Assembly (NCBI RefSeq): GCF_031769215.1
Contig: NW_026782148.1
Span: forward strand, 682,001 to 746,000
Direction: 5' to 3'
Source: Ylistrum balloti
Taxonomy: Eukaryota
Length of the DNA stretch: 64,000 nucleotides
Shown here: positions 30,737-49,698 of the stretch, piece by piece
Numbering within the stretch: position 1 is the first letter of the stretch
Layout: every line of letters starts with the position of its first letter
Translations under genes and position numbers: made by a program
Notes under the pieces: model-generated
Told to the model about the DNA's origin: nothing
Database searches by the model: none
What the model saw: only the letters and a program-made list of their open reading frames with translations

Positions 30737-31386
30737 AGAGAGAGAGAGTTTATTTCAAACCATATCATAAATCTTATGTTCCCGAATCTTCATCATCGAT
30801 ATATCTATACGTACAATCACGCATGTTGTCTGCATCAATTCCTCTAATCACATAACTAATTTTCAATTATATACACATAAATAATTCTGTTGTTTTATCA
30901 GGAAATCAGTTTTGTTGTGGAAGTACATTTCAAAGTGCTTAAGTGAGCAAAAAAAGTCATGACGTCATTAATAAATAGCAACATTACAATACGCAGGTCC
31001 TTGCTATATACATTCTGCAGGTTACCTTGTATTATGCGCCAACAACTCTGATGCCTTAATATAGATGTTTATAATAAATGGCAATTTAACTTGTACCTTG
31101 TACATATTAATAAAGTAAATGGGCCTAAAAGTCACAGAACACGATTAATTCAAATGTAGCCCCGCTCATTGTTGTTTATAGAACAATTCAAAAGGTCCAT
31201 GTATCACGTTAACATGTTCTAAAATCCGTAGTTTCTCCGCATCATTGTTGCTTAGAACAACAAAAGAACAAATACTGGCATGGCAACTCCAAATCGATAG
31301 AACTAGTGCAAAATATGAACATTTCAATGCAGTTCTAGCATTTTGTTTTTCATGAAGTCATTTTCTTAGTAAAGAAAGACAGAAAG

Positions 31387-34247
31387 TTAATCTTGAACAT
31401 ATATTTCTACCTCACACAAGCATAGAATATCCGACACCAGTTTGGATAGTTTTACATAGCGTCCATAGACAGGTGTCTGGCATGTGAACGTTTCAAACCT
31501 CGTGGTGCTAGTCTTGGTTCCGGTGCTATAACAAGTTGTGAAGGGGCCACTAGAGGCATGGGATACACCAATGCTAACATTAACCAGCGTTATACCTGAA
31601 AGATATTAAGAGGTAATGGACATGCTCATTAAAGAGTCAAAATGTTATGAAATGATCATCATCGAACTAAATTATGTCACATGGTAAAGCCGTAGTATGT
31701 AGGATGAAAAGTAAAACTTGGAACAGAAAGCTACCAGCAGAGCTTACCATCCACAAGTCTCACCGAACACGCTTACGTGAATGGCATATGATACATTGTA
31801 CAAAAAAACAAACATTTAAAACTGGATATAGTAGAAGTAAATCATCAAACAGCATCTTACAGCTGTCTCGTCCTCTAGGACTCGACAGCGATGCAGTTTT
31901 GAAGCCTAGGAGACGATTGAAGAAAATCAAGATTGCAAGATTTGTCAAATCCATATATGTGCTTTAACCTCATAATTCGATGAATTTCGTAATTTTCATT
32001 TATCTGATAATCGCAATACAACATCAAGTAAATGTGTATATTTTAAACATTGCTACTTTTCGATACGAAAAGAATAAAGGTGAACAAAACACCGGTCCGT
32101 CCCGGAGTTTCATGCGATGTTAGGAAAAAAAAGTTTGAAAATTAAGATGAGAAATCAATATCGGCCTGAATAAAATTTTAGATATAGGCAAGTATATGCA
32201 TCTAGAGTAGCGAACACGTTACATGTGCCATCCTTGAAACATGGTGGCGATAACTTGATATGTATTCTAACAAACATCCTACAACATCACAACTGAAACA
32301 AATATACCGCAATTGTTCTAATGTAAAAGTGAATCGCGGAATTAAGATTAATGTGACAAATTTTGTATTCTCATTCACTGTTGGAAAGAAGTTCAGAGTA
32401 CTACACGCATTTTATTACATATTAGATAGTACACTCAGCTTTATGATATCAAAACTTGTCCTCCGTGAATCTACAGCTACTTGTAAATTGTATGTTTGAT
32501 GGTCTTTTGACTAGGTTTGGTAGTATCATGAAAGTTAGGCTATGCATGCATCAGCAAAACGTTATAAAGTGTGAAAATATTTGTGTAAAAAAAAAGTGTG
32601 AATTGTGCAATATGTGTTTCATAATTGGTTTTAATGTATGTTATTTTTCGGTCCTTGAATCGGAAATAAATTTGTCCTAAATAAACATGACGAAATGACT
32701 TACCATCTGCGTCATCTTTTCTCTTCAACACGGCTACGTCTGTCACCAGAAAGGTATCCAAAAGGTCAACTCGCCACCATTGTGAGTTTGCTTTGTTTGT
32801 ACAAGAACACGAATCGTCAGGTTTCACAGCGACAGGATACCTGCTACCATCTACGGCCTTGGATGCACTGTAAATTCCGGAGAAAGGTGGAAAGGTAGAG
32901 GATTGAACCGCTGGTTTGCCTTCAGCCACATTACCATAAACACCTGGATAATATAAATAGACATGAGGACAAAGACAAAAATTGTTATGGATAGGCGAAC
33001 TAAAAACCTTAATATCAACCAAATGAAATTATACATTTCAAATGAGAAATATCATTTTCAATTTATGATGTTTGTCGCACAAAATTGGTGAATACTGATT
33101 AGTTTAAAAAGTGGTGCATTTATGGTTAAGGCCACTGATGCTTTAGCTTTGGGGCAAGTACTCCTCCCCATTTATATTTTGACATTTCTTTCGATCAATT
33201 TTGATTTTCCAAACTCTTCTAGATTTCATAATTTAGGCCCTTAGCATCGCTAGAAGGAGGAATAAGTTGTTTTTGGCTCTACTCCCTCCTATCATAAATG
33301 CACAATATGCCGTCTTCAGTTTTTGCATTTATCGAAACTTGACCAAATTCCACTTAGTTCGACGATCATCTTAACATATCATTAACATATTGCGTTTATT
33401 ACCATACAGTTTACAATTATGCACGTACATATGTAATAACACAAGTATTTATCTCGGTTTATAAAGACATTACGATCAATGACAACATTAACATTCATTT
33501 TGCGTATTGAAGCATTTTCCTAAATCAAGGGAGAAAAGCAACGAAAGACCTGACAGAATTGTTGCGTAGACATTACATGTATTGATCATATGTGTTAAAT
33601 GTGTAAGTAAAAAAGTAATAATCTGGAGGAAAATACTACCTTTCAGTTCATAGTATTGCATGTTTTCATCAAGTGAGGTTGGGGACAGATCGTCAGTTCT
33701 CGTGTTCCACCCTATACACTTTTTATCTTTGTAAAACACGGATACACAATCTGCCTGATAAAAACACTCTTGTGCACATGAAGATAGGCTTGGTACGGCG
33801 AGTTCCAACGTTATTCCACCACTTGGTAAAATATTATCAAATCTGTTATCGCCATGGAAATGGTTATGGCGAAATTCTGATAGGAAAAGAAGTACAAATA
33901 ACATGTTTATTCCGATTGTAATATGATATGGTCATTGTGATGTGATATGATGATTGTGATATGAAGATTTCATGGAGCAAAATACTTTTTTTGTATGACA
34001 AACAAATAAAACATGAATTAATTAATTACATCATATATACAAGTGATCTGATGCTTCTATCATGTACATTATTTACAATATTGAAATAAAAATTGAAGTC
34101 AATCAGCCGTTATCAGCATTCTTTCACACAATAGGAGGAAATATTTGTTCCATGATATGACAGAAGATAAAACAATTTTTGAATAAGTCAAAACAAATAC
34201 CTACCTGCCAGTACTGAAGTAACACAGAGCATCCTTAACATGTACAT
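31387..34247 (-). CDS. PAN/apple + F-type lectin (fucolectin-like) secreted protein, paralogue A, ~242 aa
   Basis: Exons 34205-34247 (MYMLRMLCVTSVLA; start Met tentative), 33640-33876 (PAN: SLSSCAQECFYQADCVSVFYKDKKCIGW), 32704-32943 (NVAEGKPAVQSS...ASKAVDG...SCSCT...WWRVDL...KRKDD) and 31387-31595 (FTCQTPVYGRYVKL...LCLCEVEIY..*). All junctions are phase 1 GT-AG and the 729 nt frame is open. Confidence 0.9.
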
Positions 34248-35877
34248 GGTTAATAGATGAGTGTTTGTATCATTCGATATACATATTATTGGTACCAGGA
34301 CCAAACAACTTTTCTCATAAAACATGCAATCAAGTATTCATCTATTCCATTAGCACAACAACCAACACGATTTGAATGACTGCAGTTATTCAACCAGGCT
34401 ACTTAGTAATCTATTATCGATTTGGGTGTGTGTATCTAAGGTGAATCACTCCCGAGAAAAAAATTGTTATCGTCGACGTTCGAATGATGAATGAAGAATG
34501 AGTTCACAAGAGCATTGGGTACAATGATTTTGAGATAAAATGGAGAGAAGTTACGCACTGTGAAACAAGGTAGGAGTTACCTTTCACAAGGGCGAATTTC
34601 TATACTAATAAAAATTGATGATAAGGATTTACTGGGGAAGGGGGACTAAGAAAATTCTGCCTCCTTGGATTTCGTTTCTAACGAAATCAGGATGGCAAAT
34701 CAGGATGGAGGCCTTAGTGACCCCCAACCAAAGCCTCCTCCAGTAACCAATGATGATATAGTGATACTATATAGGTCGGGGGTTGCTTAGCGATCGTCCG
34801 CCATCTTGAAATCTTGAAATCGTGCATAGAGGTAAAATAAAATAAGAAAGTTTATCTGAATTTAAGTGGTATCTAGACCTTGATAGAACCAATTATGAAC
34901 AATGTAAGTAGAGAACAGATTTTATCAAGATATTGTTTTTTCTTGTTTTTCCATTTCAGGTCATGTTTTTATAATTTCATTAGGCGGTTTAATACTAGTA
35001 TTCTTTCACAATCTATATACATGAACTAGGTCGCAATCTGGTAACAGAACTTGATCATTATGTTTAATGTAATTTTAAAATTACCTGAATAAAAAGAATC
35101 ATACAACGTTTGGTTTTTTTTCCTACTAAATAAATGTTTTATTGCAAAAAAATGAAAAAATTAACACTCGTTTGGATCAAAATTTGGAATCAGGAGTTTA
35201 AACTTGTTTAAATAAAGTTCCACTTCTTAAGGTTTTAAAAAGTAGAAGTACTCCAACTCTATAGTAAGTAACTCTTACATCAGAAAACATGTAGAATATT
35301 AGTTTAAGATAATCACACTCACTGTTGATTGTTAATGTTTCATTCCAATGAGGGTTAGTACATATCTCTCTACGAAAACGTCAGTTAAAGAAGCATTTCA
35401 TTAAGTATCCAATGTTTCTTTTTAGTTAATTACGTAGAATCTCGGACAAATCCTAATATGTCATAGAAATAGCATGCTTACTTGGTACTACATTTTCACT
35501 GAAACAACATCTGTGGGAATTACGTATGTCGACACAAACATAAGGATTGAACACTGTTTTGTAGATATTGTTGCCGATATGGCAAAAACCCGTATTTTGC
35601 TGTCTAGTGTCTCTATTAGAAACGTTGAAGGCGGCTGCAGAGCAATTGAACTAAATTCCTTTACTATAGTTACGGTGTGAGGAACCATGAAAAATTATAG
35701 GACACAGTCGTTACCAAGGCTGTACACTTGCGTAGATTCACTTATTTAAAGGTAAACCTCGATGCCTAATTTTTCTTCGGGTTGATATATCTCTTTTCCC
35801 CCGGATAATATTTTCTTTTTCGTAGTAGAATATATTTTCTCACTTTCTGTACAATTTTTCATCGTGGTATTCACGTT

Positions 35878-37340
35878 ATGATTGGTGCGTTTTCAGTTGT
35901 CGTTCTACGATTGGTGCGTTTTCAGTTGTCCTACTACGACTGGTGTGTTTTCAGTTGTCCTACTACGATTGGTGCGTTTTCAGTTGTCGTTCTACGATTG
36001 GTGCGTTTTCAGTTGTCCTACTACGATTGGTGCGTTTTCAGTTGTCCTACTACGACTGGTGTGTTTTCGAACGTTGTACTACGATTGGTGCGTTTTCGAA
36101 CGTTGTTCTACGATTGGAGTGTGTGACGTCATCAGTTTTGTTTACTTACCATTTCCATATCTTTTTCTGCAAAAGATTCTGTGTATTACAGCATGGATCG
36201 AGTGGTTGAAAGTGAAAGTGGAGGAGAACAGCATGCTTCGATTACTTGAAGTAAAGTAGATAAGGAAGAGGATCAGAATCTTATTTTATCTTTAAATTTA
36301 TGAATAAGAGAATCTGAATTTTAGTGTACATTTTAACAAAATGAAAAATGATATCGTTGAATCTGTCTTCTTGGTCTTTGTCTTTGTTTTTGCATTTATT
36401 CTACTTCTTTGATGTCTAGAAGATTGAAAGACAACATGTATCTAACTGAAGGGAGATGTGAATTTCATAAAATCACACACCTGGTCCAACAGTTAAAATT
36501 GATTTTTTATCTTTTCATTTCTTGTCTCTTCTTTTTATTTTCAAAAGCATGTGCGCGAGAATTTGAGAAAGGTATAGACTTACCAGGAAACGCTTCCGTT
36601 ACTTCCTGACTTAGGAAGAAATGTAATAAATCCCTTTCACAACGTGGAGCACCTACCTGCTCAACCTCTATTAAAGTCTCCTAGAACTGTTCAGTACACT
36701 CGGAAACCAATCGTAATGCAAAAGTCGAAAACGCACCAATCGTAGTACAGCATTTGAAAACGCACCAGTCGTAGTACGACATTTGAAAACGCATCAGTCG
36801 TAGTACAACATTCGAAAACGCACCAATCGCACAAATTGGAGTGTGTAACGTCCAAACTTTTGTTATCTTATCATTATGGGAGTGTGATACGTTATCATTT
36901 TTGTTCACTTATCAACATAGAATTGTGTGACGTCATCATTTTTGTTTACTTACCAAATTTTGTAACTTTTCGGCAACGATTTCTGCGAATTACAGCATGG
37001 TTCGAATGATTGTAGTGAGGTAGATAAGGATGAGGATCTGGATCTCATTTTATCTTAAAAGTTATGAAAAAGAGAATCAGAAGTGTTTATTTTATCATTT
37101 TATCTTAAAGTTTATGAAGAAGAGAATCGGAAGTGTCCATTTTATCATTTTATCTTAAAGTTTATGAAGAAGAGAATAGGAAGTGTCCATTTTATCATTT
37201 TATCTTAAAGTTTATGAAGAAGAGAATCGGAAGTGTCCATTTTATCATTTTATCTTAAAGTTTATGAAGAAGAGAATCGCAAGTGTCCATTTTATCATTT
37301 TATCTTAAAGTTTATGAAGAAGAGAATCGGAAGTGTCCAT
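35878..37340. repeat. Composite repeat element: 29-bp array, core, inverted 29-bp array, second core copy, 50-bp array
   Basis: tacgattggtgcgttttcagttgtcctac x~8 (35878-36115); its reverse complement x~4-5 (36695-36832); a core gtgtgacgtcatc...ttacagcatgg...gtagataagga at ~36120 and again at ~36924; and ttttatcttaaagtttatgaagaagagaatcggaagtgtccattttatca x~6 with period 50 (37046-37340). Confidence 0.85.
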
Positions 37341-37619
37341 TTAAACAAAATTAAAAGAAATAATACTGTTAAATCTGTGGTCTTTTTCTTTGCCTTTATT
37401 TTGTCACGACTTTGTCATAATTTTGTCATATTTTGTCATGATCTGTGATATTTTGTCACCATACCAGTATTCCGTTGACAATTTATTCTCTAGCAACGAG
37501 CAAACAAATCTGTGAATACAAAACATTTGCAGCCCTGAGGATTTCCATGATGTTGTCGAATTCAGCTTGCACTATATTGGCAATCATTCGTTCTCCATTC
37601 AAAGTTTACAACCAAACTT

Positions 37620-38480
37620 ACCAGCATTTTAAAACTTTACAAAGAGACAGGATGGGATCCACTTAAAACTAGAAGAAACTATCATAAAATTATCCAGCTT
37701 CATAAAATGGTCCATAGCAAAACACCGCCATATTTACAAGATATACTTCCTCAGAGACACTCCAATATACACGGTCACAATACTAGAGAAGCCAATAACT
37801 TTCTTCCAATTCGCTGCAGAACAAATACATATAAAAAGTCCTTCTTATCTTCAACAATCCACATTTGGAATGATCTCCCCGCTGCTATTAAAAATAATCC
37901 CTCTCTTTCAAAATTAAAATTGTATTTAAGTGCCAATGCTACTTCAGTGCCAACATATTATTTTGCTGGAACTAGACTTGGACAAATATACCATGCTAGA
38001 TTGCGTATGGAATGTAGTTCCCTAAATGACCATTTATTTAAGAAAAAAATTGTTGAATCTCCGTTGTGTAATTGTAGGTTATCAAATGAAACTGTCGAAC
38101 ATTATCTTTTATAATGTACCAAATATAGAAACATTAGACAAGACTGTTTTGCTACTTTACCTTTACAGATAACCTTGGATACTTTAGTTTATGGAAACAC
38201 TAACTTACCGAGAAATACCAACGAAATAGTATTTCAAAGTGTTCAAAATTACATTTTACGCACTAAAAGATTTGAATGATTGTTACATTATTTTTGTATG
38301 ATAATTAAATATTTATATACATATAGTATCAGTATCGGCGCTTACAGTGCTGTTAAGTAGAATCACATCAAGGAGACAGATTTATATAAGTGTTCATCAC
38401 TTGTTTCTGAATCCTTTTCTTTTGTATACCTAAGTACTCTGTAATATGTTATGTAATAAGAAAGAAATAAAGTTTAAACT
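37620..38480 (+). mobile_element. 5'-truncated CR1-type LINE (3' end of ORF2 plus 3' UTR)
   Basis: LYKETGWDPLKTRR...HKMVH...YKKSFLSSTIHIWNDLP...QIYHARLRMECSSLNDHLFKKKIVESPLCNC...ETVEHYLL*C; ends at aaataaagtttaaac near 38465. Confidence 0.88.
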
Positions 38481-38889
38481 AAAGTTTACTCGAGGTGAAA
38501 ACTGAGAAAAAGAAAATTGGGTATTGCCGATTATGATTATTAAAAAAAAACAAACAAACAATCAAAAACAAAAACAAACAAACAAACAAAACAACGAAAA
38601 AAACGAAAAACAAAAAGTTATTATCAGAAAGCGATAAATTATATAGACAATACCAGGATTGTTATTTTGTGAAATATTTTCCAAAAATTTGTGTACAAAG
38701 AACTGATTTTAGATGTTTGTAGAAAATCATTTATAGATTTATAACCATTCGCGAGTTGTAGGGAAAACATGTTGTCGAAAAAGCAGATTTTCTGAGGAAG
38801 ACTCAAAACACACGCTGGGTTTCACGACCCCAAAACATTCAACGAGGGTATCAATAGTTAAAAGTCTATCACAGATCACCGATTGGTGG

Positions 38890-39290
38890 CAGAATCAAGA
38901 TCATTACAGCGTTTGAAGACTGGTTCGACACAGGCAGTGGATTACATGTGGGATCCCGATTGAGAACATGTCTCCAACATCATAGACTATAACGATGACA
39001 CCTCTTCCTTATTAGTGGTGGTGCATCACTTTTCAGGCAATACTTCGGTGCTACACCTGAAGAACAAGAAGGCCAGCATGGTGTTGGAAGCTCTTGAAAA
39101 GATATTTGCCGAGAGGAAACCAAGCATCGTCTATAAGATAAATGATCCGAGTTAAAAGGTACATAGATATTGCTGCAAAATACATCATCCCAATGAAACG
39201 ATATATAGATACTGCTACAAAGGCGTACGAAACCAAATTGATTTGTGACAAAATATCCACTGCCGCGCTTTGCAGAAAGGGCTGCTGACC
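38890..39290 (+). mobile_element. Decayed Maverick/Polinton-type retroviral-like integrase fragment
   Basis: One frame with stops reads VDYMWDPD*EHVSNIIDYNDDTSSLLVVVHHFSGNTSVLHLKNKKASMVLEALEKIFAERKP, matching the Polinton integrase pattern WQADLxDMxxxxxYNDGxxYLLxVIDxFSRYxxxxPLKNKxxxxVxxAFxKIFxxRKP. The catalytic Asp residues are degraded. Confidence 0.72.
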
Positions 39291-40185
39291 TTATTTTTTT
39301 GTTTACTTATTGTTTATTCCTCATTGATTTGAAAGATGTTTGCTCACTCATCATTAACAAAAGCAATTTTGAAATCAATAAACTGATAAATAATGCTAGT
39401 TATACAAGAAAACTTCAGCATCTGTCATTTTGTCGACGGAAATGGAAATTGGATAAAAGCCTGCCTTTGCCATGTTCTCAAAATTGGTATCAGAGACACC
39501 ACACGGTCACCGAAGATTGCCATGACGACTAAGCAGCCTTTCTAGTATTCTGTAATTAAATTTGCATCATTTAAAAGCTTTCCGCAAATAATATTCAGTA
39601 TGGAATGAATTATTTGGATACAAGCCCTAGAGCATTTTGAATGCCACCCTATCGCGTTCGCGGTCTATTTCTATCCTTACTTCTAAAATAACACCGTGCA
39701 TGCATGATTTATTGCCATGCCAACATCAGTAACATCTTCAAAGTAATATTACAATTTGCTTTATATAAAATTGACAGTTTGAAGAAAATAATTTGTCGCT
39801 TTGTCGAGCAACAATGACTTTGCCAGAAGTGTTTGAAATAGCAGTAATACTGTGGTCTGTGCAAGTATCAAACATTTTAAAAACCTTGTGTATCTGGGAA
39901 GCAACAGAAGTAGAGTAACTGTGACTATTGGCACTTACCTAATAGAAGTTTAGTGTGTGATAAGGAGGGAATGAACGTAGAGACATATGGTTATATAAGT
40001 TTTTGAATTATGTTTTTTTAAATGAATTTCCTTCAATCGTTTATATCACTAAGTATATATGAAAAGGTCACAGGGTAAATCTATCTATTGTTATTTGGGC
40101 GTCAAACTTGTATTTCAAGATGGTTGACTCCTCAGACTGACTGTATTCGAGGCCAGGACATTCTCGTTTAGCTGGAGGAAACTTG

Positions 40186-40697
40186 TGAGTGGGGGACTAA
40201 TGGTACACGAGATTGGCAGTAACCTTGTGTCTAGGGGACTAATGGTGCACGAGACTGGCAGTGACTTTGTGTCCAGAGGACTAATAATGTACGAGATTGG
40301 AAGTAATGTTGTGATTGGAGGACTAATAGTGCACAAGACTGGCAGTGACTTTGTGTCCAGAGGACTAATAATGTACGAGATTGGAAGTAACCTTGTATCT
40401 GGAGGACCAATAGGGCACGAGATTGGCAGTGACTTTGTGTCCAGAGGACTAATAATGTACGAGATTGGAAGTAACCCTGTGTCTAGGGGACTAATAGTGC
40501 ACGAGATTGGCAGTGACCTTGTGTCCAGAGGACTAATAATGTACGAGACTGGAAATAACCTTGTGTCTGGAGGACTAATAGGGCACGAGACTGGCAGTAA
40601 TGTTGTGATTGGAGGACTAATAGTGCACAAGATTGGCAGTAACCTTGTGTCTAGGGGACTAATAGTGCACGAGATTGGCAGTGACCTTGTGTCTTGA
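40186..40697. repeat. 42-bp minisatellite, ~12 copies, open in one frame on each strand
   Basis: Unit gagattggcagtaaccttgtgtctaggggactaatagtgcac (EIGSNLVSRGLIVH on plus; PISCTISPLDTRLL on minus); explains ORFs 40185..40697 and 40115..40846. Confidence 0.92.
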
Positions 40698-41076
40698 TGA
40701 ATAACAATGTAGGTACAAATAGCTCCGAGATTGACCGAAACCGTTTGACTGTAGGAATAATAATCCTTATGTTGATATTTTGCAGTACCTCTTTGCTCAA
40801 CTCTCCTTTTATCCATTTTGCTCAGATTCTTTTTACATTTTTTCATATTTCTAGTGATATTAAGTATTTAACACACGTTCATGCCTACCTTGACATATAA
40901 TGCGGCTACATTGTGCTATTTGACCAAAGTTATCTCTGGCGTTAAATAATTTCATAATATACAACATCCTGTTTTGGAAATTTTACGCTTTTTATTACAT
41001 AAAACAAAATGACGTTAAAATAATTTGCATGGAATATGTGATACACACGTGAATCTGATTATGAAGTTCTATATTA

Positions 41077-41415
41077 TCATAATAAAACCCTGGAATATTT
41101 CGTAAACACGCAAGTCCTGATTGTGAAGCTCTCTATTATCATAAACCATGGAATATTTGGTAAACACGCGAGTCCTGAGTGTAAAGCTCTCTATTATCAT
41201 AAAACCATGGAATATTTGGTAAACACGCGAGTCCTGATTGTGAAGCTCTCTGTTATCCTAATAAAACCCTGGAATATTTGGTATACACGCGAGTCCTGAT
41301 TGTGAAGCTCTCTATTATCATAAAACCATGGAATATTTGGTAAACACGCGAGTCCTGAGTGTAAAGCTCTCTGTTATCATAAAACCACGAAATGTGAAGC
41401 TCTCTATTATGATAA
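41077..41415. repeat. Tandem repeat, ~59-62 bp unit, ~5.5 copies
   Basis: taaaaccatggaatatttggtaaacacgcgagtcctga(g/t)tgt(a/g)aagctctctattatca repeated. Confidence 0.9.
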
Positions 41416-41823
41416 TGAAACTATGGGCTCCAATAACAACCTCGTACCTAGACTATTTCGTTTGAATATGTATAATCGAATGCTACTTAATTGCCTGGAA
41501 ACTTCAGTTGCTTTTATACATCAAGGAAATTCGTTCATCAGTAGCAGTGCTGATGGAAGTCGATAAGGTTTTTTTTTTTTATAGAATCTTGATACAAACG
41601 ATGTTTCATCTTTTATGCTGTTGTTTCTACTGTTGTAGTGCCGTGGTCTTACATTATCGGTGTTGTTCATCTTTTAAATTTGGAGCTTTTCAACTCGTGA
41701 GCTTATATATTTCTAAGTGCCGTTAAAGCTTGGTTAGGAATGGAAAAAATGTTCCTGGTAGTCGACGAAATTTCCAGAGCAGCAACAACAGTAACGACAA
41801 TTATCATTTTTTTCATTCAAAAC

Positions 41824-44800
41824 TTATGCTAGAACGTATATTTCAACCTCACACATACAATAATAAGATTGTACAAGTTTCGAGAGTTTTACATAACGTC
41901 CATAAATTGGCGTCTGGCATGTAAACGTTTCAAATCTCATCACGGAGTATGTGGGACCGGTGTTGTAACAATGTGAGAAAGGACCACCGACATCCAAGGC
42001 AACATCGATACTGACATTTACCAGAGTCATCCCTGAAAGTACACAAAACAAATTGGGATCCTTAAATACCAGAATATTGACATCACCAACGACATATATG
42101 AAACATAATACAAGACCACGCTCATTCTCGACTGTTAATGCAACATAAACACTTATCACTGTATTATCATAAATAAATAAGTCCTTCAGCTGTAACTGCA
42201 TTCCTGATGATAATCCTTGTATCGATGACTCACAGATTCAAGGACAAACAGATAAACAAGTTTTCAGACTCACGGACAGACAGATTAACAAAAAAGTACT
42301 CACACTCACGGACAGACAGATAAACAAACAAGTTATCAGACTCACGGACAGACATATGAACATACAAGTTCTCAGACTCACGGACAGACAGATAAACAAA
42401 CAAGTTCTCAGATTCACGGACAGACAGATAAACAAGTTTTCAGACTCACGGACAGACAGATTAACAAAAAAGTACTCACACTCACGGTCAGACAGATAAA
42501 CATACAAGTTCTCAGACTCACGGACAGACAGATAAACAAACAAGTTCTCCGCCTCACGGACAGACAGATAAACAAGTTTTCAGACTCACGGACAGACAGA
42601 TAAACAAACAAGTTCTCCGCCTCACGGACAGACAGATAAACAAACAAGTTCTCAATAATACGTGAAATGAAGTACATAAATAAGGAAGGGAAGGTTGACT
42701 TCGAAAACTAGAACGCAAACAAAATACCTAAAACATTTTCAGTTGAAAGATTTGTTATCATAGACAAAAATGTGGAAAAGATAACTGAACAAGTTTTATG
42801 GAATGTGTAACAAGAACTGTACTAGGGTCATCTTTCACGCGTTTTATACAAATAACTTTCTATCTGGGAAATGAATATCACTTATATGATTTTAGTAATG
42901 ACAGCTCCTCCTGCATGGGTATTTTGTCAGTGTCAATGGCTCCATAGACTATTTAAATATATAGAAATTGTACTAGCTCCATTAAGACAATGGTTTTTTC
43001 TGAAGTACTGTTCTGTAAATGGTGCTGTTTCGACTGTTTCTTTCTACTTGCGAAACTTTGAATCTTTGAAAAATCTTTACAATAGTTTATCGATCATTTT
43101 ATAAAACAGCTACATCAGGAAGATAAATGTCGCACCAAATATATCATCCTGCCTCTTCAGCACGGCTACGTCTGTCACTAGATAGGTATCCAAAAGGTCA
43201 ACCCGCCACCATTCCAAGGTCGTCTTCCCCGTGCACGAACAGGAATCGTCCGGTTGGAAAGCGACGGGATATCTGCTTCCGTCCACGGCCTTGGAAGCGA
43301 CGTATGATCCTTGGAAAGGCGGAAAGGTGGATGACTGAACCGCTGGTTTTCCTTTAGCAACATTACCATATATACCTGTATAATGGATCGTCATAGTGTC
43401 ATCATAATAGACCTTTCTATAGGGAATAAAACTTCATTATACAGGGTATAAAACGTTATTGTAGTTAAGGGCTATGAAATCATTCACCCCGTTTGACATA
43501 ACGATTCTATACCAAATGATAAACGAAGCCGATCTCAAGCCATAGAACTATCAAATAAAGAAAGGGCCCTGTGATCATTATATAAGTACATTAAGTGAAT
43601 TTTACACAGCTCTATGAATAACACGATTGATTTACCAATGTTTCAAATTAACAGGAAGTACATCACAACTCAGGTTACGTAATGTTTAAAATTTACAGAT
43701 TGCTGATGTTTACCTGACAAACAATGATTAATTATTATGCATGATATAAAGCTACTGTACAATTGATTGTAGCAGTGAACAAATATTCTAAAAATAGACT
43801 GGCGATTCCGTAAACACGACGGTATTGTATTCGTCACTTAGTAATGATTTTCCTTTAAAACTCTCACCCGACCCCTTCTACTGCTAAACAAGTATGTGAA
43901 ACACTGTACTAAACTTTTTTCCCCATAAAAAAGATCCGGTAACAACTAATTTAAATTAAATGTTTATTTCATTGAGTAGTTCATCTGAAAGTGAATTAGA
44001 TATTCCAATATTAAAGTAAAAACTAGGGGAAAAATGTAAAATAGTTGTATTTTTAAATAAATACGAAATGAAAATCTAGACAATTACATGAATTTCGTTG
44101 TAATATAAACGGAGGTCATGGGAAAGGTAGAGAGAGAATAAGATCAGAGGTGTCCCGGAATCGTTTTTCACTTCATTGACTATGGTAGCCATGTAAGTAT
44201 AGGTAACTGACGCTTTCTTAAATAGGCAAACTAAACGCTTCCCATAGCTCACAAATATGAAGAAAAATCTCATCCAATGTACGCATGTACATAAAACCTG
44301 TCATTTTTTACCACTGAACTAAAACTATGTTTAATCACATCTATTGCAATAAATAAACCAACAAAATCACTTACTGGAAAATTAAGGAAAAGTTATATCA
44401 ATCATCTCCTGTTAAGGTAATGAACCTCACGAAAAAATGCTAGAATAAGATCAGGTGCTCAGGATAAAGGAATTCAACCTCTCGTTTTGTTTTCCATTGA
44501 ATTTTTCAGCCAATTTTTTCACTTGCCGAAGGACCAAATGAATACCAATTAATTAATTAATTTGCTTATATAGAGCTCTGAAGGTAACATCAACCGAACG
44601 ATGAATGGTTCAGGCAACTCGGTCGATATCACGATCCTCTGCTGACGTTGACACATCTTTAATTGTATAAATGCAAATTAAAACTAGTTTTAATGTTATT
44701 TATACAGGCTGATTGTGATTATATACAAGGATTAAATTATTAGCGGAAGGAGGTAATTTGGGGGTGGAGCAAGGTGGCCCAACTGTCGCCCGTGCGCACT

Positions 44801-45153: not shown

Positions 45154-48100
45154 CCAAGCGTTTATGCTATGTACATGACTCGTCATATCCGCTGTGTTAA
45201 GTTTGTAATTTCATAAAGTCATTACCTAAGCCTGAGTTGTTGATTAGGTCATTTAGAGATGTATATATATATATATGTCTCTGGGTTACTGAACTTGTAC
45301 CATTCAATAATTCACAATTAATGTTAAATTGTCTACCCTTTAGTATAACATCCAGGTATGTCATGTTCTTGTTATATGCTGTAAAGTTTTCCTTCATATC
45401 TGATAAATTTGTACAATGTTTGTTTTCTTGACTTGTATTAACTGTATTGCTTTATGTTTATGTATGGTGATGATGAGCCCCATCTAAGACTTGTTTATTA
45501 AATTTAAATGATAAACTTTGAACCAAATAACAAATGTCGTTTACTAAAATAAACGCCCACATCTTTAATTGTATAATTACTATTTACACTCAATTATCAC
45601 CAAGCCAACACAAGTAACGTTATCACCGGAAATAGTCTACGATATACTAACTATAAAAACCCGATCTTAAACTAAAAACGGAACATATATGCAGGCACTT
45701 ATAACACATGGTCAGTGTTGGAATTGCTAAGTTGTCTCAACACTCATGACCACCCAAACATCACTGACGATTCTAGGAAGGACAAAACAGCTATATGATG
45801 CAGTTATTAATTTCGGGAAAGGTATCACTATTAAGCAACCATGCATATATCTTTCCTTCATATTTTGCTAAAGTTTAGAGGATGTTCAAATTGTGTTTTA
45901 TTTCCAAATTGGTAATGCCTAAGACTGATATCAGAATAATGATGTTATCAATATATACTGTACTAGCTCTGTGTAACATACAAAATGCATGTTCTTTTTA
46001 TCTTATTCAAAATACAAAATAGAAAACACGATTCAGCGTTGAACGAAGGGTTTTATGAAAGCTAGACTGTTCCGTGGTATACATTTTTTGTATTCAACTA
46101 CACATACAAGAAAAGATGGAGATAACCATTCCAAATATATATCTATTAAATTTACGAATCACGAACTCGAAATGAAAATAGATGCAATGAATAAAAACTC
46201 ATTATAACGAACGATTTCTGTAATGATGCAATTTACATTTATTAATAAATACATCGACACACTTAACAATTTACTCTGAGCTCATCACTTCCGCTAATTA
46301 CCTATTAATATTTAACTGACGTCCTAACTAATACTGGATTTTGTCATATTTAAAAAAGATTTCCAGAGTTCGGTGACGGGGTATAAAACATCAACCTTAA
46401 AACATAAAGAAAAAACACTCTGTTCCATTTGTCTAATAATTCCTAGCATTTTAACTTGGGGCGACATGGTGATGTCATTTTTGTTTTAATTTACATATTG
46501 TCAATTACTCATGATGAGGTCTTGTAGTGGTAAAAAGGTCAGACATTACATATATAACTACATTCGTGACAGAAACACATATTGAGGCATGCTATTAAAC
46601 CGTTTCATTGAAGATCACTCTCGTTTATAAATGATAGTCTGTTGATATCACGACATCATGTTTTTTTTTAAAGTACTGTATTTGCGCTACAGAGAATTTT
46701 GATTTGAAAAGCTGGTACTGTATATAGAGCTATGCAAATGTGTTAACGTTTAATAGTCTCAATCTCCATCATGATTCTATATATGTGTTTAAAACCCTTA
46801 AAAAGAACTAGAAATGAGGTTTTGAAATGAAAACGTATTACATGTGATAAAGTCGGACGTTTTTTATGAGGGATATTTTGTTTCTTTTCTTTTTGTAGTA
46901 TGGCATGTCTAATGTGAATAACGAATGATACAGGTCAAGAGGACTGATGAAAAAAATCGTTATTACCTCTCAATTCATAATATCGCATATTGTCGGCTAG
47001 CGAAGTCGGGGACAGGTCGTTCAGTCTCGTGTTCCATCCAATGCATTGCCCATCCTTGTAAAACATAGATATACAATCGGTGTGGTGATAGCACTCCAGT
47101 GCACACGAGGCGAGACTTGACACGATGAAGTTCCACTTTATTCCGTCTTCAGGTAATTTACTATCGTACCCTCTGTCGAGGTGGAAAAAGTTCTGTCGGA
47201 ATTCTGTGATGAAATGCATTAATTATATAAATGTATATCAATTGATCCTGTGTGCAAACATACTTTTTAACATAAGGAATTTGCAATAATTTTGCGTAGA
47301 AAATAAGCAATTCTTCATATCATTATATTCGGAGAGTGTAAAAAAATGTCTTATAAATTAGAAAGTCATAACAAAGTGGCGGGGTAAAACGAGGTTTCGA
47401 AAAGTCACGTGATGAACGTGGTAGACTGCGAAAGTCATAACAAAGTGGCGGGTTAAAACGAGGTTTCGAAAAGTCACGTGATGAACGTGGTAGACTGCAT
47501 AACAACGAGTGCCGACCAATTTCAGCTTGAAGCTGATATCATTCCAATTTTCTCAGAAAGCTCTGTAATTTTGTGAACAGTCTTATCTTAAATATATCCA
47601 CTTGCCCGAAATCAAACGCATGGGGAAAATAATCTAAAATCTAACCCTTTAGTCCCTTTCAATAAGACTCTTTTAAACACAAAGTTAGAACAGCAATAAG
47701 TCTACTATGGTTACAGCTATTTTACTAATGTTATTACTTGGTTATGATTTTGAAACAAATCCGGGACCTTGTGCTTTTAGTGGAATTTCTTTTTTCCCAT
47801 TTAGATAGCAGAAACATTCGTAATAAGCTCTCGGCTATCGAAACTATTGTCCATGATTATCACGTAGTGTCTATCACAGAGCCTCATTTGGATTACACTG
47901 TGGATAATTCTGACCTGTTACTGGAAGGATTTTCCGAGCCTCACGTGCTTGACAGGAACTGTTTTAGGGGTGGGGTATCCGTTTATAGTAAACGATGTAC
48001 ATTTCAAACGTGGAAATGATTTAGAATTTATCAGTGGTGAAGTTATCTGGATGGAAAACAACATAAGTAACAGAACTTATCTAATCTGCACTGTATACCG

Positions 48101-49698
48101 TCCTGAAGGTGATATTACACCTTTTTGGGACAACTTTCAATATTCAATAGAAAAAGCATTTACTCAGTGATATTATTATGGTGACAAACGATATGCTAAC
48201 AGTATAAATCATAAAATCAATGGATTTATTGTTAACTAATGTTATCGTGTGTCACGGACACTACCCGTACTCTAATTGGTCCTATATTCATTAGTATGTG
48301 TTTGTTTGTTTGAATCGTCAGTTATCCTATTGATAAAAATATCGGTGATCACTCGGCTACACTTTTAAATCTTAAGTCTCCGGGAATAATGAGAGAAAAT
48401 TTCAACATGAAGTTATGATCGATAAAAATGTCAATTCGCCTTTCTTAAAATCACCAAATGAAGCATATGATATTTTTACTTCCGAATTAACGGAGTTTGC
48501 AAATATGTGTACCCTCCCCCCCACTCCCCCCGGCTCATGCCAGGTAGTTCTGTTCGGCAACCTAGGATAGCGGCGTCGCAACACTTCCAGGTGCGAAAAT
48601 AGATTAGAAACACAGACAGTAACAAAGGACGAAACACATGACATTGTAAAGCAATAGAATTGAATAAGGCATCTGGATATGATAAAATTAGCCACAATAT
48701 GTTTAGAACACTATTGAGACAGTCTGTGAACCTCTTAAAATATTATTTAATCTATCTCTAAATCAGTGTTTCCCCAACAATGGAAACCTGCAGTGGTTAT
48801 GCCTTTATTTCAAAAGAATGAACTTTTTTACAGGTACATTACAGCCGATTTCATTTTTTAGTTCTGTTAGTAAAGTCTTCGAAAGGGCTGTGTATAAACA
48901 TTTACATAATTTTCCAATAACCTTTTATATAAATATCAATCATGTTTTGTTCTTTGTCACTCTACTGTATATCAGCTAATTGAGATATATGATAATTTAT
49001 GCTTAGAATTAGATAGTAAACCCCAGACATGTATGGTATTTTTCGACATTTCCAAAAGCTTTCGACAGAGTCTAGCAAAAGGATCTGCGGACAAAAATAC
49101 ATTGTAATGGTATCCAGGGCAGTCATCTACATTGGCTAAAAGATTATTTGAGTGGTAACAAACAAAAAGTTTTTCATTAGAGAAGCATGTTCATCAGTAA
49201 GTGACAATAATGCCGGAGATCCACAAGGGTCAATACCAAAGGCCACTTTTGTTTCTAATCTTAAGTGACATATCAGACAACTTGTATTCTCTAGCTAGAA
49301 TGTTTGCTTATGACACTTCTGTCGCCTATTCTTTTAATAACTGTTTAGAAAAAGAACATTTTGGTACGTTTAAAATTTAACAAAAAAGACCCAAAACTTT
49401 TCACAAAATACAATATCAGTATATCTGAACAAAAAATATATCTCTTTTGTTCATGCCTTTTTTGATACATTACCTTGAAGGTTCTATTAATGTAGAGGAA
49501 AACTTGAAGTCGGAAGAAGTTTTAAGATATTGAAAGGAAACGGTAAAACGTTACTTGTATGATTCTGTGCTTGTCATTTACGTGTTTTAAAAAATGAGAT
49601 AGCAAAGCACTTTTTCAAATCCGCTTACCTGTCAGAGCTAATGAAGCACAGAACACTCCTAGCATGTACATGCTTTGAAGAATACGTACGCACTCCAT
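41824..49698 (-). CDS. PAN/apple + F-type lectin (fucolectin-like) secreted protein, paralogue B, ~251 aa
   Basis: Exons 49629-49698 (MECVRILQSMYMLGVFCASLALT), 46967-47203 (PAN: SLASCALECYHHTDCISMFYKDGQCIGW), 43136-43375 (NVAKGKPAVQSS...ASKAVDG...SCSCT...WWRVDL...KRQDD) and 41824-42032 (FTCQTPIYGRYVKL...YCMCEVEIYVLA*). Exons 2-4 have the same lengths as paralogue A (237/240/209 nt) and all junctions are phase 1. Confidence 0.92.
42229..42655. repeat. 32/36-bp minisatellite, ~12 copies, in intron 3 of paralogue B
   Basis: ctcacggacagacagataaac(aaac)aagttctcaga repeats with recurring variant order; explains ORFs 42238..42543 and 42414..42677. Confidence 0.9.
45117..45150. repeat. (AT)17 microsatellite
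   Basis: Direct reading of the sequence. Confidence 0.95.
47361..47498. repeat. 69-bp near-perfect tandem duplication
   Basis: gaaagtcataacaaagtggcggg(g/t)taaaacgaggtttcgaaaagtcacgtgatgaacgtggtagactgc at 47361 and 47430, one mismatch. Confidence 0.92.
47735..49330 (+). mobile_element. Decayed CR1-type LINE (APE endonuclease + RT) antisense in intron 1 of paralogue B
   Basis: Endonuclease-like SRNIRNKL...VVSITEPHL...DRNCFRGGVSVY...LICTVYRP; RT-like KASGYDKISH, WKPAVVMPLF, VFFDISK, NAGDPQGS and MFAYDTS, with many stops and frameshifts. Confidence 0.82.

What the first reader, a model, noticed from the sequence alone, without database searches (positions are those of the whole stretch)
31387..43375. 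Disulfide-locked F-type lectin domain: both paralogues swap the fucose-binding His for Cys and gain a facing Cys
Seen: both domains read S-C-S-C-T where F-type lectins have C-x-H. The spacing C-x26-R-x-D keeps the canonical H-x26-R-x-D-x4-R register, but the last Arg is replaced (RKDDADGI, RQDDIFGM) and the vicinal CC is absent. The C-terminal strand is L-C-L-C-E-V (A) and Y-C-M-C-E-V (B) instead of L-x-L-C-E-V. Known, from memory of eel agglutinin AAA: disulfides C50-C146, C82-C83 and C108-C124, His52/Arg79/Arg86 bind fucose, and the strand reads LHLCEV (His144). Inference: with 50:146 bridged in antiparallel register, 52 and 144 are cross-strand neighbours. The two extra Cys would then form a new disulfide at the sugar pocket, giving a rigid non-fucose or redox-switchable recognition module. 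The change is retained in both diverged paralogues, which argues against decay.
Basis: partly seen in the sequence, partly recalled or inferred. Interest (0 to 1): 0.72.

Follow-up and report, generated by a model that had tools for sequence, protein, structure and literature searches.

The report
Scallop lectin-fold genes with extra cysteines
Two neighbouring scallop genes encode small secreted PAN + F-type-lectin-fold proteins that have lost the usual fucose-binding residues and carry two extra cysteines that probably form an additional disulfide at the old sugar pocket; this is a modest structural variant of a known family and is not unique to molluscs.

Summary
The window is Ylistrum balloti (scallop) DNA. 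It holds two minus-strand paralogous genes, NCBI 'fucolectin-like' (237 aa) and 'fucolectin-6-like' (233 aa). Each encodes a PAN/apple domain plus one F-type lectin domain (FLD).

Both FLDs read S-C-S-C-T where eel agglutinin AAA has S-C50-T-H52, and C-x-C-E-V where AAA has H144-L-C146-E-V. Both lack the vicinal Cys82-Cys83 and the last basic residue of the fucose motif.

The genes are not decaying:
- dN/dS between the paralogues is 0.17.
- All 10 Cys are conserved between them.
- A second individual shows 3 synonymous and 1 conservative coding SNPs in gene A.

The disulfide reading is supported but unproven. AlphaFold models (pLDDT 91) show matching short strands at 48-50 and 139-141. Coevolution analysis puts 50:146, 51:145 and 52:144 in one antiparallel register.

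Among 829 FLDs, 7 of the 10 with Cys144 also have Cys52, against 21 of the other 819. These fall in three independent lineages: scallops and two fish lineages. Cys52 alone is nevertheless recurrent across Metazoa, and Cys144 alone occurs in a sister scallop protein.

This is a new variant of a known kind. There is no evidence for a redox switch.

The parts
34205..34247 (-). Gene A, probable signal-peptide exon (MYMLRMLCVTSVLA + phase-1 G, donor GT at 34204-34203); absent from the NCBI model
   Evidence: Scan for ATG + hydrophobic peptide + G|GT upstream. It is homologous to the equivalent piece upstream of gene B, and similarity ends at the donor. Orthologues P0003 and P0005 have a signal peptide ending just before E-F/I-R. 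Inferred; no RNA data.
33640..33904 (-). Gene A PAN/apple exon as annotated (Met at 33904). The true exon probably starts at 33876, after the acceptor ..tatcag|AATTTCG.
   Evidence: Exact match to P0001 residues 1-88. Pfam PAN_1 scores 22.1 bits against a cut-off of 21.4. The acceptor was seen.
32704..32943 (-). Gene A FLD exon 1 (strands beta1-beta5, Ca site, S-C-S-C-T, R-K-D-D-A-D-G). Cys50 codon 32807-32809; Cys52 codon 32801-32803.
   Evidence: AG acceptor and GT donor; phase-1 introns on both sides.
31387..31595 (-). Gene A FLD exon 2 with stop codon. Cys144 codon 31420-31422; Cys146 codon 31414-31416; also the Cys108 and Cys124 equivalents.
49629..49671 (-). Gene B, probable signal-peptide exon (MYMLGVFCASLALT + phase-1 G, donor GTAAGC); absent from the NCBI model
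   Evidence: Inferred.
46967..47219 (-). Gene B PAN/apple exon as annotated. The true exon probably starts at 47203, after ..atcacag|AATTTCG.
   Evidence: Exact match to P0002 residues 1-84. Acceptor seen. PAN_3 is below its cut-off (17.8 bits against 21.1), but the exon is 59% identical to the gene A PAN exon.
43136..43375 (-). Gene B FLD exon 1. Cys50 codon 43239-43241; Cys52 codon 43233-43235; CDR4 reads R-Q-D-D-I-F-G.
41824..42032 (-). Gene B FLD exon 2 with stop codon. Cys144 codon 41857-41859; Cys146 codon 41851-41853.

Best explanation
These are two anciently duplicated, functional scallop genes. Each encodes a small secreted protein made of a signal peptide, a PAN/apple domain and one F-type-lectin-fold domain (FLD).

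What the FLD keeps: the jelly-roll scaffold, the structural cation site (A-V-D-G-S, Ser49, Glu147) and the two canonical disulfides (50-146 and 108-124).

What the FLD has lost: the canonical fucose site. His52 is Cys, there is no basic residue at 86, and the vicinal Cys82-Cys83 is replaced. Only the Arg79-Asp81 salt bridge remains.

The extra cysteines: Cys52 and Cys144 sit opposite each other in a short antiparallel ladder, one rung above the Cys50-Cys146 bridge. They most probably form a third disulfide, giving a two-rung C-x-C / C-x-C ladder like that of protegrin-type hairpins. This would fix the floor of the former sugar pocket.

Likely function: the domain then serves as a non-canonical recognition module. 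The loops around the pocket (CDR3, CDR4, CDR5) are the most variable parts among orthologues and paralogues.

Shown: gene structure, fold, loss of motif residues, purifying selection, neighbour register, and association of the two Cys.
Inferred: the disulfide itself, secretion, and loss of fucose binding.
Unknown: the ligand.
For: Gene models and identity.

Fold: AF2 pLDDT 90.7 and 91.3. Foldseek's best hit is 1K12 at E 6e-13 and TM 0.82, followed by SpX, FBP32 and lectinolysin FLDs.

Motif status: checked against the published motif in PMC5712786.

Selection: dN/dS is 0.165 overall and 0.174 in the FLD, with dS about 1.4. The FLD intron (the one compared) is unalignable and all 10 Cys are conserved. 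A second individual's DNA contigs show 3 synonymous changes and 1 Y>F change in the coding exons. No change falls in a Cys codon, and SNP density is about twice as high outside the exons.

Geometry: DSSP on the models gives E at 48-49 and 140-141 in A, and at 48-50 and 139-141 in B. These are equal-length mini-strands whose register (i+j=189) contains 47:142 (=50:146) and 49:140 (=52:144). Mean-field DCA on 588 FLDs ranks 47:142 second, 48:141 fourth and 49:140 96th of 10,440 pairs. After every Cys52 or Cys144 domain is removed, 49:140 still ranks 83rd, and the best partners of residue 140 are 48 and 49.

Cys parity: 6 Cys in the FLD and 4 in the PAN domain, all conserved in the five full-length pectinid proteins.

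Association: of 829 FLDs, 28 have Cys52, 10 have Cys144 and 7 have both. Fisher p is 2.6e-9 on raw domains, which are not independent. Cys144 arose three times on the tree, and each lineage contains Cys52 members. One is P0203, whose nearest relative P0261 (71% identical) has Leu52/Ser144.

Other: every Cys144 domain lacks RGDCC..R.
Against: - No coordinates were available, so the S-S distance was not measured.
- The DSSP pairing is inferred from equal strand lengths plus DCA, not read from a hydrogen-bond list.
- Cys52 occurs without Cys144 in 21 domains of 16 proteins from many phyla.
- Cys144 occurs without Cys52 in P0068, P0199 and P0263, so neither Cys needs the other.
- P0068, the sister of the clade, has Leu52 with Cys144 plus an extra C-terminal Cys. 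This shows that another partner for Cys144 is conceivable.
- Three independent lineages are too few for a formal sign test.
- There is no RNA or protein evidence for these genes in this species.
- Loss of fucose binding is inferred from the motif only.
Confidence: 0.62

Rival explanations
1. The two extra cysteines are independent substitutions that stay unpaired, either as free thiols or used for intermolecular bridges. The FLD is simply one more degenerate F-type domain that has lost sugar binding and serves as a scaffold or a protein-binding module.
For: Cys52 alone is recurrent, with about 15 origins on the tree and 21 domains, most with an odd Cys count. Cys144 alone occurs in P0068, P0199 and P0263. 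FTLDs without the basic triad are already known in oyster isoforms and Drosophila CG9095 (PMC5712786).
Against: Both Cys are invariant in all five full-length clade members over a duplication with dS above 1. The Cys count is even. The neighbour register comes from two independent lines. Cys52 is enriched about 27-fold among Cys144 domains. Two adjacent free thiols in a secreted protein would be expected to oxidise.
Confidence: 0.22
2. Cys52 and Cys144, together with the acidic residues around them (D-D before S-C-S-C; R-x-D-D-x-D in gene A), form a metal-binding or redox-sensing site rather than a static disulfide.
For: The only support is the clustering of two Cys with several Asp at the former pocket. 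No tool result speaks for it directly.
Against: The acidic CDR4 residues are not conserved between paralogues or orthologues (DDADG, DDIFG, DDIYG, DDPSG, DDLFG). The proteins have signal peptides in orthologues, so they sit in an oxidising environment. There is no known precedent in the F-type lectin reviews searched.
Confidence: 0.08
3. The genes are decaying or are annotation artefacts, and the Cys changes are noise.
For: There are no RNA runs for this species. The NCBI models lack a proper signal peptide.
Against: The reading frames are intact with canonical splice sites. dN/dS is 0.17. Orthologues exist in Pecten maximus and Argopecten irradians. Probable signal-peptide exons are conserved between the paralogues. 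Polymorphism in the exons is mostly synonymous.
Confidence: 0.03

Closest known systems
Anguilla anguilla agglutinin (AAA, PDB 1K12) and the N-domain of striped bass FBP32 (3CQO): canonical F-type lectin domains
   Same: Same fold (TM 0.82). Same WWRVDL core, the same cation motif h-h-D-G-x with Ser49 and Glu147, and the same Cys50-Cys146 and Cys108-Cys124 positions. Arg79 and Asp81 are retained.
   Different: His52 is Cys, residue 144 is Cys (His in AAA; Thr or Ser in most FLDs), there is no Cys82-Cys83 and no Arg/Lys86. A PAN/apple domain is fused at the N-terminus. Identity is 33% or less.
FTLDs that deviate from the fucose motif (Crassostrea gigas FTL isoforms 3, 7, 8, 9 and 10; Drosophila CG9095), as reviewed in PMC5712786
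   Same: F-type fold with the basic triad replaced. In bivalves, multigene families have variable CDR loops.
   Different: Those reports describe 'different combinations of residues'. No Cys52/Cys144 pair is mentioned in the two reviews read.
Mizuhopecten yessoensis fucolectin-like XP_021350065.1 (P0068)
   Same: Sister of the clade (SH-aLRT 94) at 44% identity. It lacks RGDCC..R and has Cys144 in M-C-L-C-E-V.
   Different: It has no PAN domain, has Leu at position 52, and has an extra Cys in a C-terminal tail.
Fish tandem FLD proteins P0183 (Onychostoma macrolepis, C-domain) and P0203 (unnamed, nearest to Anarhichas minor, N-domain)
   Same: Independent occurrences of C-x-C-T together with L-C-x-C-E-V, in domains that have also lost RGDCC..R.
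   Different: These are vertebrate proteins with tandem two-FLD architecture, and they are 31-32% identical to paralogue B in the alignment. P0183 has also lost Cys108 and Cys124.
Two-rung cross-strand disulfide ladders of beta-hairpin peptides (protegrin, tachyplesin; C-x-C ... C-x-C). This comparison is from general knowledge and was not tested here.
   Same: The same sequence logic: two disulfides at i:j and i+2:j-2 of antiparallel strands.
   Different: Those are short peptides, not a jelly-roll domain, and there is no homology. The comparison only shows that the geometry is stereochemically feasible.

Membership tests
F-type lectin domain (FTLD / fucolectin tachylectin-4 pentraxin-1 domain) | F-type jelly-roll fold | tested here: met
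   AF2 models have pLDDT 90.7 and 91.3. The Foldseek top hits are 1K12, 2J1T, 2J22, 3CQO and 3LE0, with TM 0.77-0.82.
F-type lectin domain (FTLD / fucolectin tachylectin-4 pentraxin-1 domain) | Sequence homology to solved or curated FTLDs | tested here: met
   phmmer of exon 1 against 3CQO gives E 2e-11 and against 1K12 gives 3e-5; exon 2 against 1K12 gives 1.4e-4. Pfam PF22633 scores 51.7 bits (cut-off 27.8) and PF00754 scores 36.8 bits (cut-off 28.2).
F-type lectin domain (FTLD / fucolectin tachylectin-4 pentraxin-1 domain) | Fucose-binding motif H-X24-R-X-D-X4-(R/K), as given in PMC5712786 | tested here: not met
   His is replaced by Cys and the final basic residue is absent. Arg and Asp are kept at AAA spacing. 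The proteins are therefore members of the fold family but not canonical fucose-binding F-type lectins.
F-type lectin domain (FTLD / fucolectin tachylectin-4 pentraxin-1 domain) | Cation-binding motif h-h-D-G-x plus Ser49 and Glu147 | tested here: met
   A-V-D-G-S, Ser before Cys50, and C-E-V are present and invariant in the clade. Metal binding itself was not tested.
F-type lectin domain (FTLD / fucolectin tachylectin-4 pentraxin-1 domain) | Disulfides 50-146 and 108-124; vicinal 82-83 | tested here: inconclusive
   Cysteines are present at 50, 146, 108 and 124 and absent at 82 and 83. Bond formation was not tested.
F-type lectin domain (FTLD / fucolectin tachylectin-4 pentraxin-1 domain) | Binding of L-fucose or fucosylated glycans | not testable with these tools
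   Needs recombinant protein and a glycan array.
PAN/apple domain | Pfam PAN profile match and the conserved Cys pattern | tested here: met
   For P0001, PAN_1 scores 22.1 bits (cut-off 21.4) and PAN_3 scores 21.9 bits (cut-off 21.1). P0002 is below the cut-off (17.8) but homologous. Four Cys are conserved.
Cross-strand C-x-C / C-x-C disulfide ladder (a structural motif, not a homology family) | The two Cys pairs occupy i:j and i+2:j-2 of directly paired antiparallel strands | tested here: inconclusive
   The register is supported by DSSP strings and by DCA ranks 2, 4 and 83-96. No coordinates or hydrogen-bond list were available, so the distance was not measured.

The most novel reading that the evidence does not exclude
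A 52-144 disulfide has evolved convergently in scallops and in two fish lineages, and only in F-type domains that have given up the RGDCC..R fucose site. It would replace the lost vicinal Cys82-Cys83 and His52 as the structural floor of the pocket. The FLD would then become a new, non-fucose recognition scaffold whose CDR3-5 loops diversify. In parallel, His52-to-Cys alone would be a recurrent and possibly functional alternative in otherwise canonical fucolectins.
Probability: 0.4. Interest if true: 0.45.

Novelty: new variant of a known kind. Interest (0 to 1): 0.36.

Why it matters
F-type lectins are used as fucose probes and are studied as innate-immune and fertilisation recognition proteins. 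It would be useful to know which sequence variants still bind fucose.

A conserved extra disulfide exactly at the sugar-binding His would give a simple sequence signature: C-x-C-T together with C-x-C-E-V and no RGDCC. That signature would mark FLDs that have left fucose recognition but remain under selection. It would also point to a compact, extra-rigid scaffold for engineering.

The finding is of moderate interest. It concerns a handful of uncharacterised proteins, and loss of the fucose triad in bivalve FLDs is already documented.

Tried and rejected
- Direct distance measurement. Structure prediction returns no coordinates and nothing is written to /data. I used DSSP strings and my own DCA instead.
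- RNA evidence. The look-up of sequencing runs found no RNA run, only one DNA run. Read laying on that run gave a second individual's genomic contigs, which were useful only for polymorphism.
- Word-based protein search with a single query. It found only 9 proteins. The profile query and the exhaustive representative search were needed.
- Literature. The two F-type lectin reviews that were read, and the text searches run, turned up no mention of a C-x-C variant or of these scallop proteins. Bishnoi et al. 2015 (Glycobiology) is not in the library and could not be checked.
- Pseudogene reading. Rejected on dN/dS and intact splice sites.
- Formal phylogenetic sign test of co-gain. Only 3 independent Cys144 origins exist, so it cannot reach significance.
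- Earlier scan notes. They held only the same first-reader note, plus a PAN + discoidin + C-type lectin gene elsewhere in this genome.
- Operator restrictions.


Full report
WHAT IS THERE

The window is genomic DNA of the scallop Ylistrum balloti. A protein search with the exon-bearing ORF returned two 100%-identical NCBI models, P0001 'fucolectin-like' (237 aa) and P0002 'fucolectin-6-like' (233 aa).

Both genes lie on the minus strand.
- Gene A has exons at 33640-33904 (PAN/apple), 32704-32943 and 31387-31595.
- Gene B has exons at 46967-47219 (PAN/apple), 43136-43375 and 41824-42032.
- The spliced exons translate exactly to P0001 and P0002.
- Splice sites are canonical and all introns are phase 1.
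- tblastn finds no further copy in the window.

Pfam calls a PAN domain and a discoidin-like F5/8-C / NedA-like domain above the cut-offs.

THE OBSERVATION

Both domains read S-C-S-C-T and C-(L/M)-C-E-V at the stated places.

phmmer against PDB aligns the first exon to FBP32 (3CQO, E 2e-11) and to eel agglutinin AAA (1K12). The first Cys falls under Cys50 and the second under His52. The second exon aligns to 1K12 with the extra Cys under His144 and the next Cys under Cys146.

- disulfides 50-146, 108-124 and 82-83;
- His52/Arg79/Arg86 binding the fucose 4-OH;
- cation ligands including Ser49, Cys146(O) and Glu147;
- the motif H-X24-R-X-D-X4-(R/K).

In both scallop proteins Arg79 and Asp81 are kept. 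Cys82 and Cys83 are replaced by D-A or D-I. No basic residue stands at or near position 86. Profile alignments prefer a one-residue deletion there. The cation motif (A-V-D-G-S, Ser49, Glu147) and the Cys108/Cys124 pair are kept.

ARE THE GENES ALIVE?

- Nei-Gojobori dN/dS between A and B is 0.165 (PAN 0.12, FLD 0.17), with dS about 1.4.
- The intron between the two FLD exons, the only one compared, shows no detectable similarity between A and B.
- All ten Cys codons are conserved.
- Orthologues of both paralogues exist in Pecten maximus and Argopecten irradians (P0003-P0006). Every full-length one has both extra Cys.
- A DNA run from another individual covers gene A with about 1% divergence. 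Within the coding exons there are four differences, three synonymous and one Tyr>Phe. None touches a Cys codon.
- No RNA run is available for this species.

The NCBI models begin at in-frame ATGs that lie just upstream of good acceptor sites (..cag|AATTTCG, encoding E-F-R). P. maximus and A. irradians orthologues carry a normal signal peptide that ends exactly before E-F/I-R.

Upstream of each gene there is a short ATG-initiated hydrophobic exon ending in G|GT. In A it is MYMLRMLCVTSVLA at 34247-34205. In B it is MYMLGVFCASLALT at 49671-49629. The two are homologous, and similarity stops at the donor. I take these to be the true first exons. This is an inference, not a demonstrated fact.

FOLD AND GEOMETRY

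AlphaFold2 with 70-74 diverse FLD rows gives confident models: pLDDT 90.7 for A and 91.3 for B. Foldseek's best PDB match for A is 1K12 (E 6e-13, TM 0.82), followed by pneumococcal SpX modules, FBP32 and lectinolysin.

Two indirect lines speak to it.

First, DSSP on the models. In domain numbering, Cys47 = AAA 50, Cys49 = 52, Cys140 = 144 and Cys142 = 146.
- Model A shows a two-residue strand at 48-49 and another at 140-141.
- Model B shows three residues at 48-50 and three at 139-141.
- Equal lengths, and the register i+j=189 that also contains the known 47:142 disulfide, indicate one antiparallel mini-ladder in which 49 and 140 are bridge partners.

Second, my mean-field direct-coupling analysis of 588 FLD domains.
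- It ranks 47:142 second, 48:141 fourth, 48:140 23rd, 53:137 41st and 49:140 96th of 10,440 pairs.
- On a larger set, with every Cys52 or Cys144 domain removed, 49:140 still ranks 83rd. The best-coupled partners of residue 140 are 48 and 49.
- The coupling of beta2 is to 57-59, not to 48-49. This removes the alternative partner suggested by the published strand order.

The shared cation ligands Ser49 and Cys146/Glu147 fit the same register. By general knowledge of beta-hairpin peptides, a second disulfide at i+2:j-2 is stereochemically feasible.

COVARIATION ACROSS HOMOLOGUES

The exhaustive representative search found 1,944 relatives. The best 150 are mostly multi-FLD proteins. A profile word search added 120 more.

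jackhmmer extracted 931 FLD instances, of which 829 cover both positions. In those 829 domains:
- Position 52 is His in 433 and Cys in 28.
- Position 144 is Thr or Ser in 629 and Cys in 10.
- Both are Cys in 7: the five pectinid PAN-FLD proteins, the C-domain of P0183 (Onychostoma macrolepis, a cyprinid) and the N-domain of P0203. P0203 is unnamed; its nearest relative, P0261 of Anarhichas minor at 71% identity, has Leu52/Ser144.
- Raw Fisher p is 2.6e-9, but the domains are not independent.

On a tree, Cys144 arose three times and Cys52 about fifteen times. All three Cys144 lineages contain Cys52 members, but three events cannot give a significant sign test.

All ten Cys144 domains lack the RGDCC..R site.

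Against a strict dependency:
- Cys52 stands alone in 21 domains of 16 proteins. These come from Rana temporaria, several fishes, two nemerteans, Ptychodera flava, Oscarella pearsei, Mya arenaria and Gigantopelta aegis. Most have an intact RGDCC..R and an odd Cys count.
- Cys144 stands alone in P0199 and P0263 (cyprinids, which also carry a C-terminal F-C).
- Cys144 also stands alone in P0068 of Mizuhopecten yessoensis. P0068 is the sister of the PAN-FLD clade (SH-aLRT 94). It has Leu52 and an extra Cys in a C-terminal tail.

Each Cys can therefore exist without the other. Even so, the pair is strongly enriched, was gained repeatedly, and is invariant in this clade.

MECHANISM PROPOSED

The proteins are secreted PAN + FLD proteins. 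The FLD keeps its scaffold and cation site but no longer has a canonical fucose pocket. Cys52 and Cys144 most likely form a third disulfide directly above Cys50-Cys146.

Among the five clade members the invariant parts are the Ca segment, the C-x-C motif and the core strands. The most variable parts are CDR3 (all six positions vary), CDR4, CDR5 and one bottom loop. This fits a recognition surface that is still in use and diversifying, but five sequences are a thin basis.

The ligand is unknown. Loss of fucose binding is inferred from the motif alone. Nothing supports a redox switch or a metal site, and the acidic CDR4 residues are not conserved.

COMPARISON AND NOVELTY

FTLDs lacking the basic triad are known, for example oyster isoforms and Drosophila CG9095 (PMC5712786). 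The two reviews I read, and the text searches I ran, turned up no C-x-C / C-x-C variant and no study of these scallop proteins. One relevant survey, Bishnoi et al. 2015, is not in the library.

I rate this as a new variant of a known kind, of moderate interest. The signature is real, conserved and convergent. It concerns a few uncharacterised proteins, and the key claim, the bond itself, remains to be measured.

LIMITS

- No coordinates, no RNA and no biochemistry were available.
- The DCA used about 460-530 effective sequences.
- The trees are poorly resolved (FastTree or quick IQ-TREE on about 141-143 columns).
- Taxon names for most multi-domain hits were not looked up.

Noticed in passing
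34205-34247 and 49629-49671 (minus strand): Both NCBI gene models appear to miss a short 5' signal-peptide exon (MYML...). They start instead at an intronic in-frame ATG just before the acceptor ..cag|AATTTCG. The two candidate exons are homologous, and similarity ends at the GT donor.
   Followed up: partly
related proteins P0007, P0008, P0038, P0059, P0062, P0092, P0097, P0119, P0127, P0156, P0198, P0206, P0252: His52-to-Cys alone is a recurrent substitution in otherwise canonical fucolectin domains (RGDCC..R kept). It occurs in frog, teleosts, nemerteans, a hemichordate, a sponge and molluscs, usually giving an odd Cys count. His to Cys needs two nucleotide changes, so repeated fixation may be functional: a free thiol beside the vicinal disulfide.
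   Followed up: partly
P0068 (Mizuhopecten yessoensis XP_021350065.1); P0183, P0199 and P0263 (cyprinids): FLDs with Cys144 but no Cys52 tend to carry an additional Cys in a short C-terminal tail (..VSSCELP in P0068; ..VFC[WQ] in the cyprinids). This may be an alternative partner, or a link to a linker Cys.
   Followed up: no
42233-42654: A 36-bp-unit tandem array (about 11 copies, with higher-order periods of 104-176 bp) lies inside the intron between the two FLD exons of gene B. It produces long spurious minus-strand ORFs (LSVRESENLF...).
   Followed up: partly
35880-36097, 36706-36829, 37045-37342, 40194-40711, 41028-41387: The intergenic space between the two paralogues is packed with minisatellites of period 29, 50, 42/84 and 59/121 bp. 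The 29-bp arrays at 35880 and 36706 look like inverted copies of one another.
   Followed up: no
55216-57970 (+) and 37707-38114 (+): There is a non-LTR retrotransposon split into three ORFs: an endonuclease-like ORF of 383 aa, then reverse-transcriptase-like ORFs of 203 and 231 aa. A separate fragment resembles the C-terminal tail of a LINE ORF2. These calls are from the ORF translations only and were not run against Pfam.
   Followed up: no
23150-23704 (minus strand): A 184-aa ORF rich in Pro, Thr and Ser (PPPPP, TTAP repeats), possibly an exon of a mucin-like or low-complexity protein. It is unrelated to the finding.
   Followed up: no
31300-34300: A public DNA run from another individual differs at about 1% of sites (34 SNPs and 4 indels in 3 kb). 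SNP density in gene A's coding exons is about half that of the introns and flanks.
   Followed up: yes
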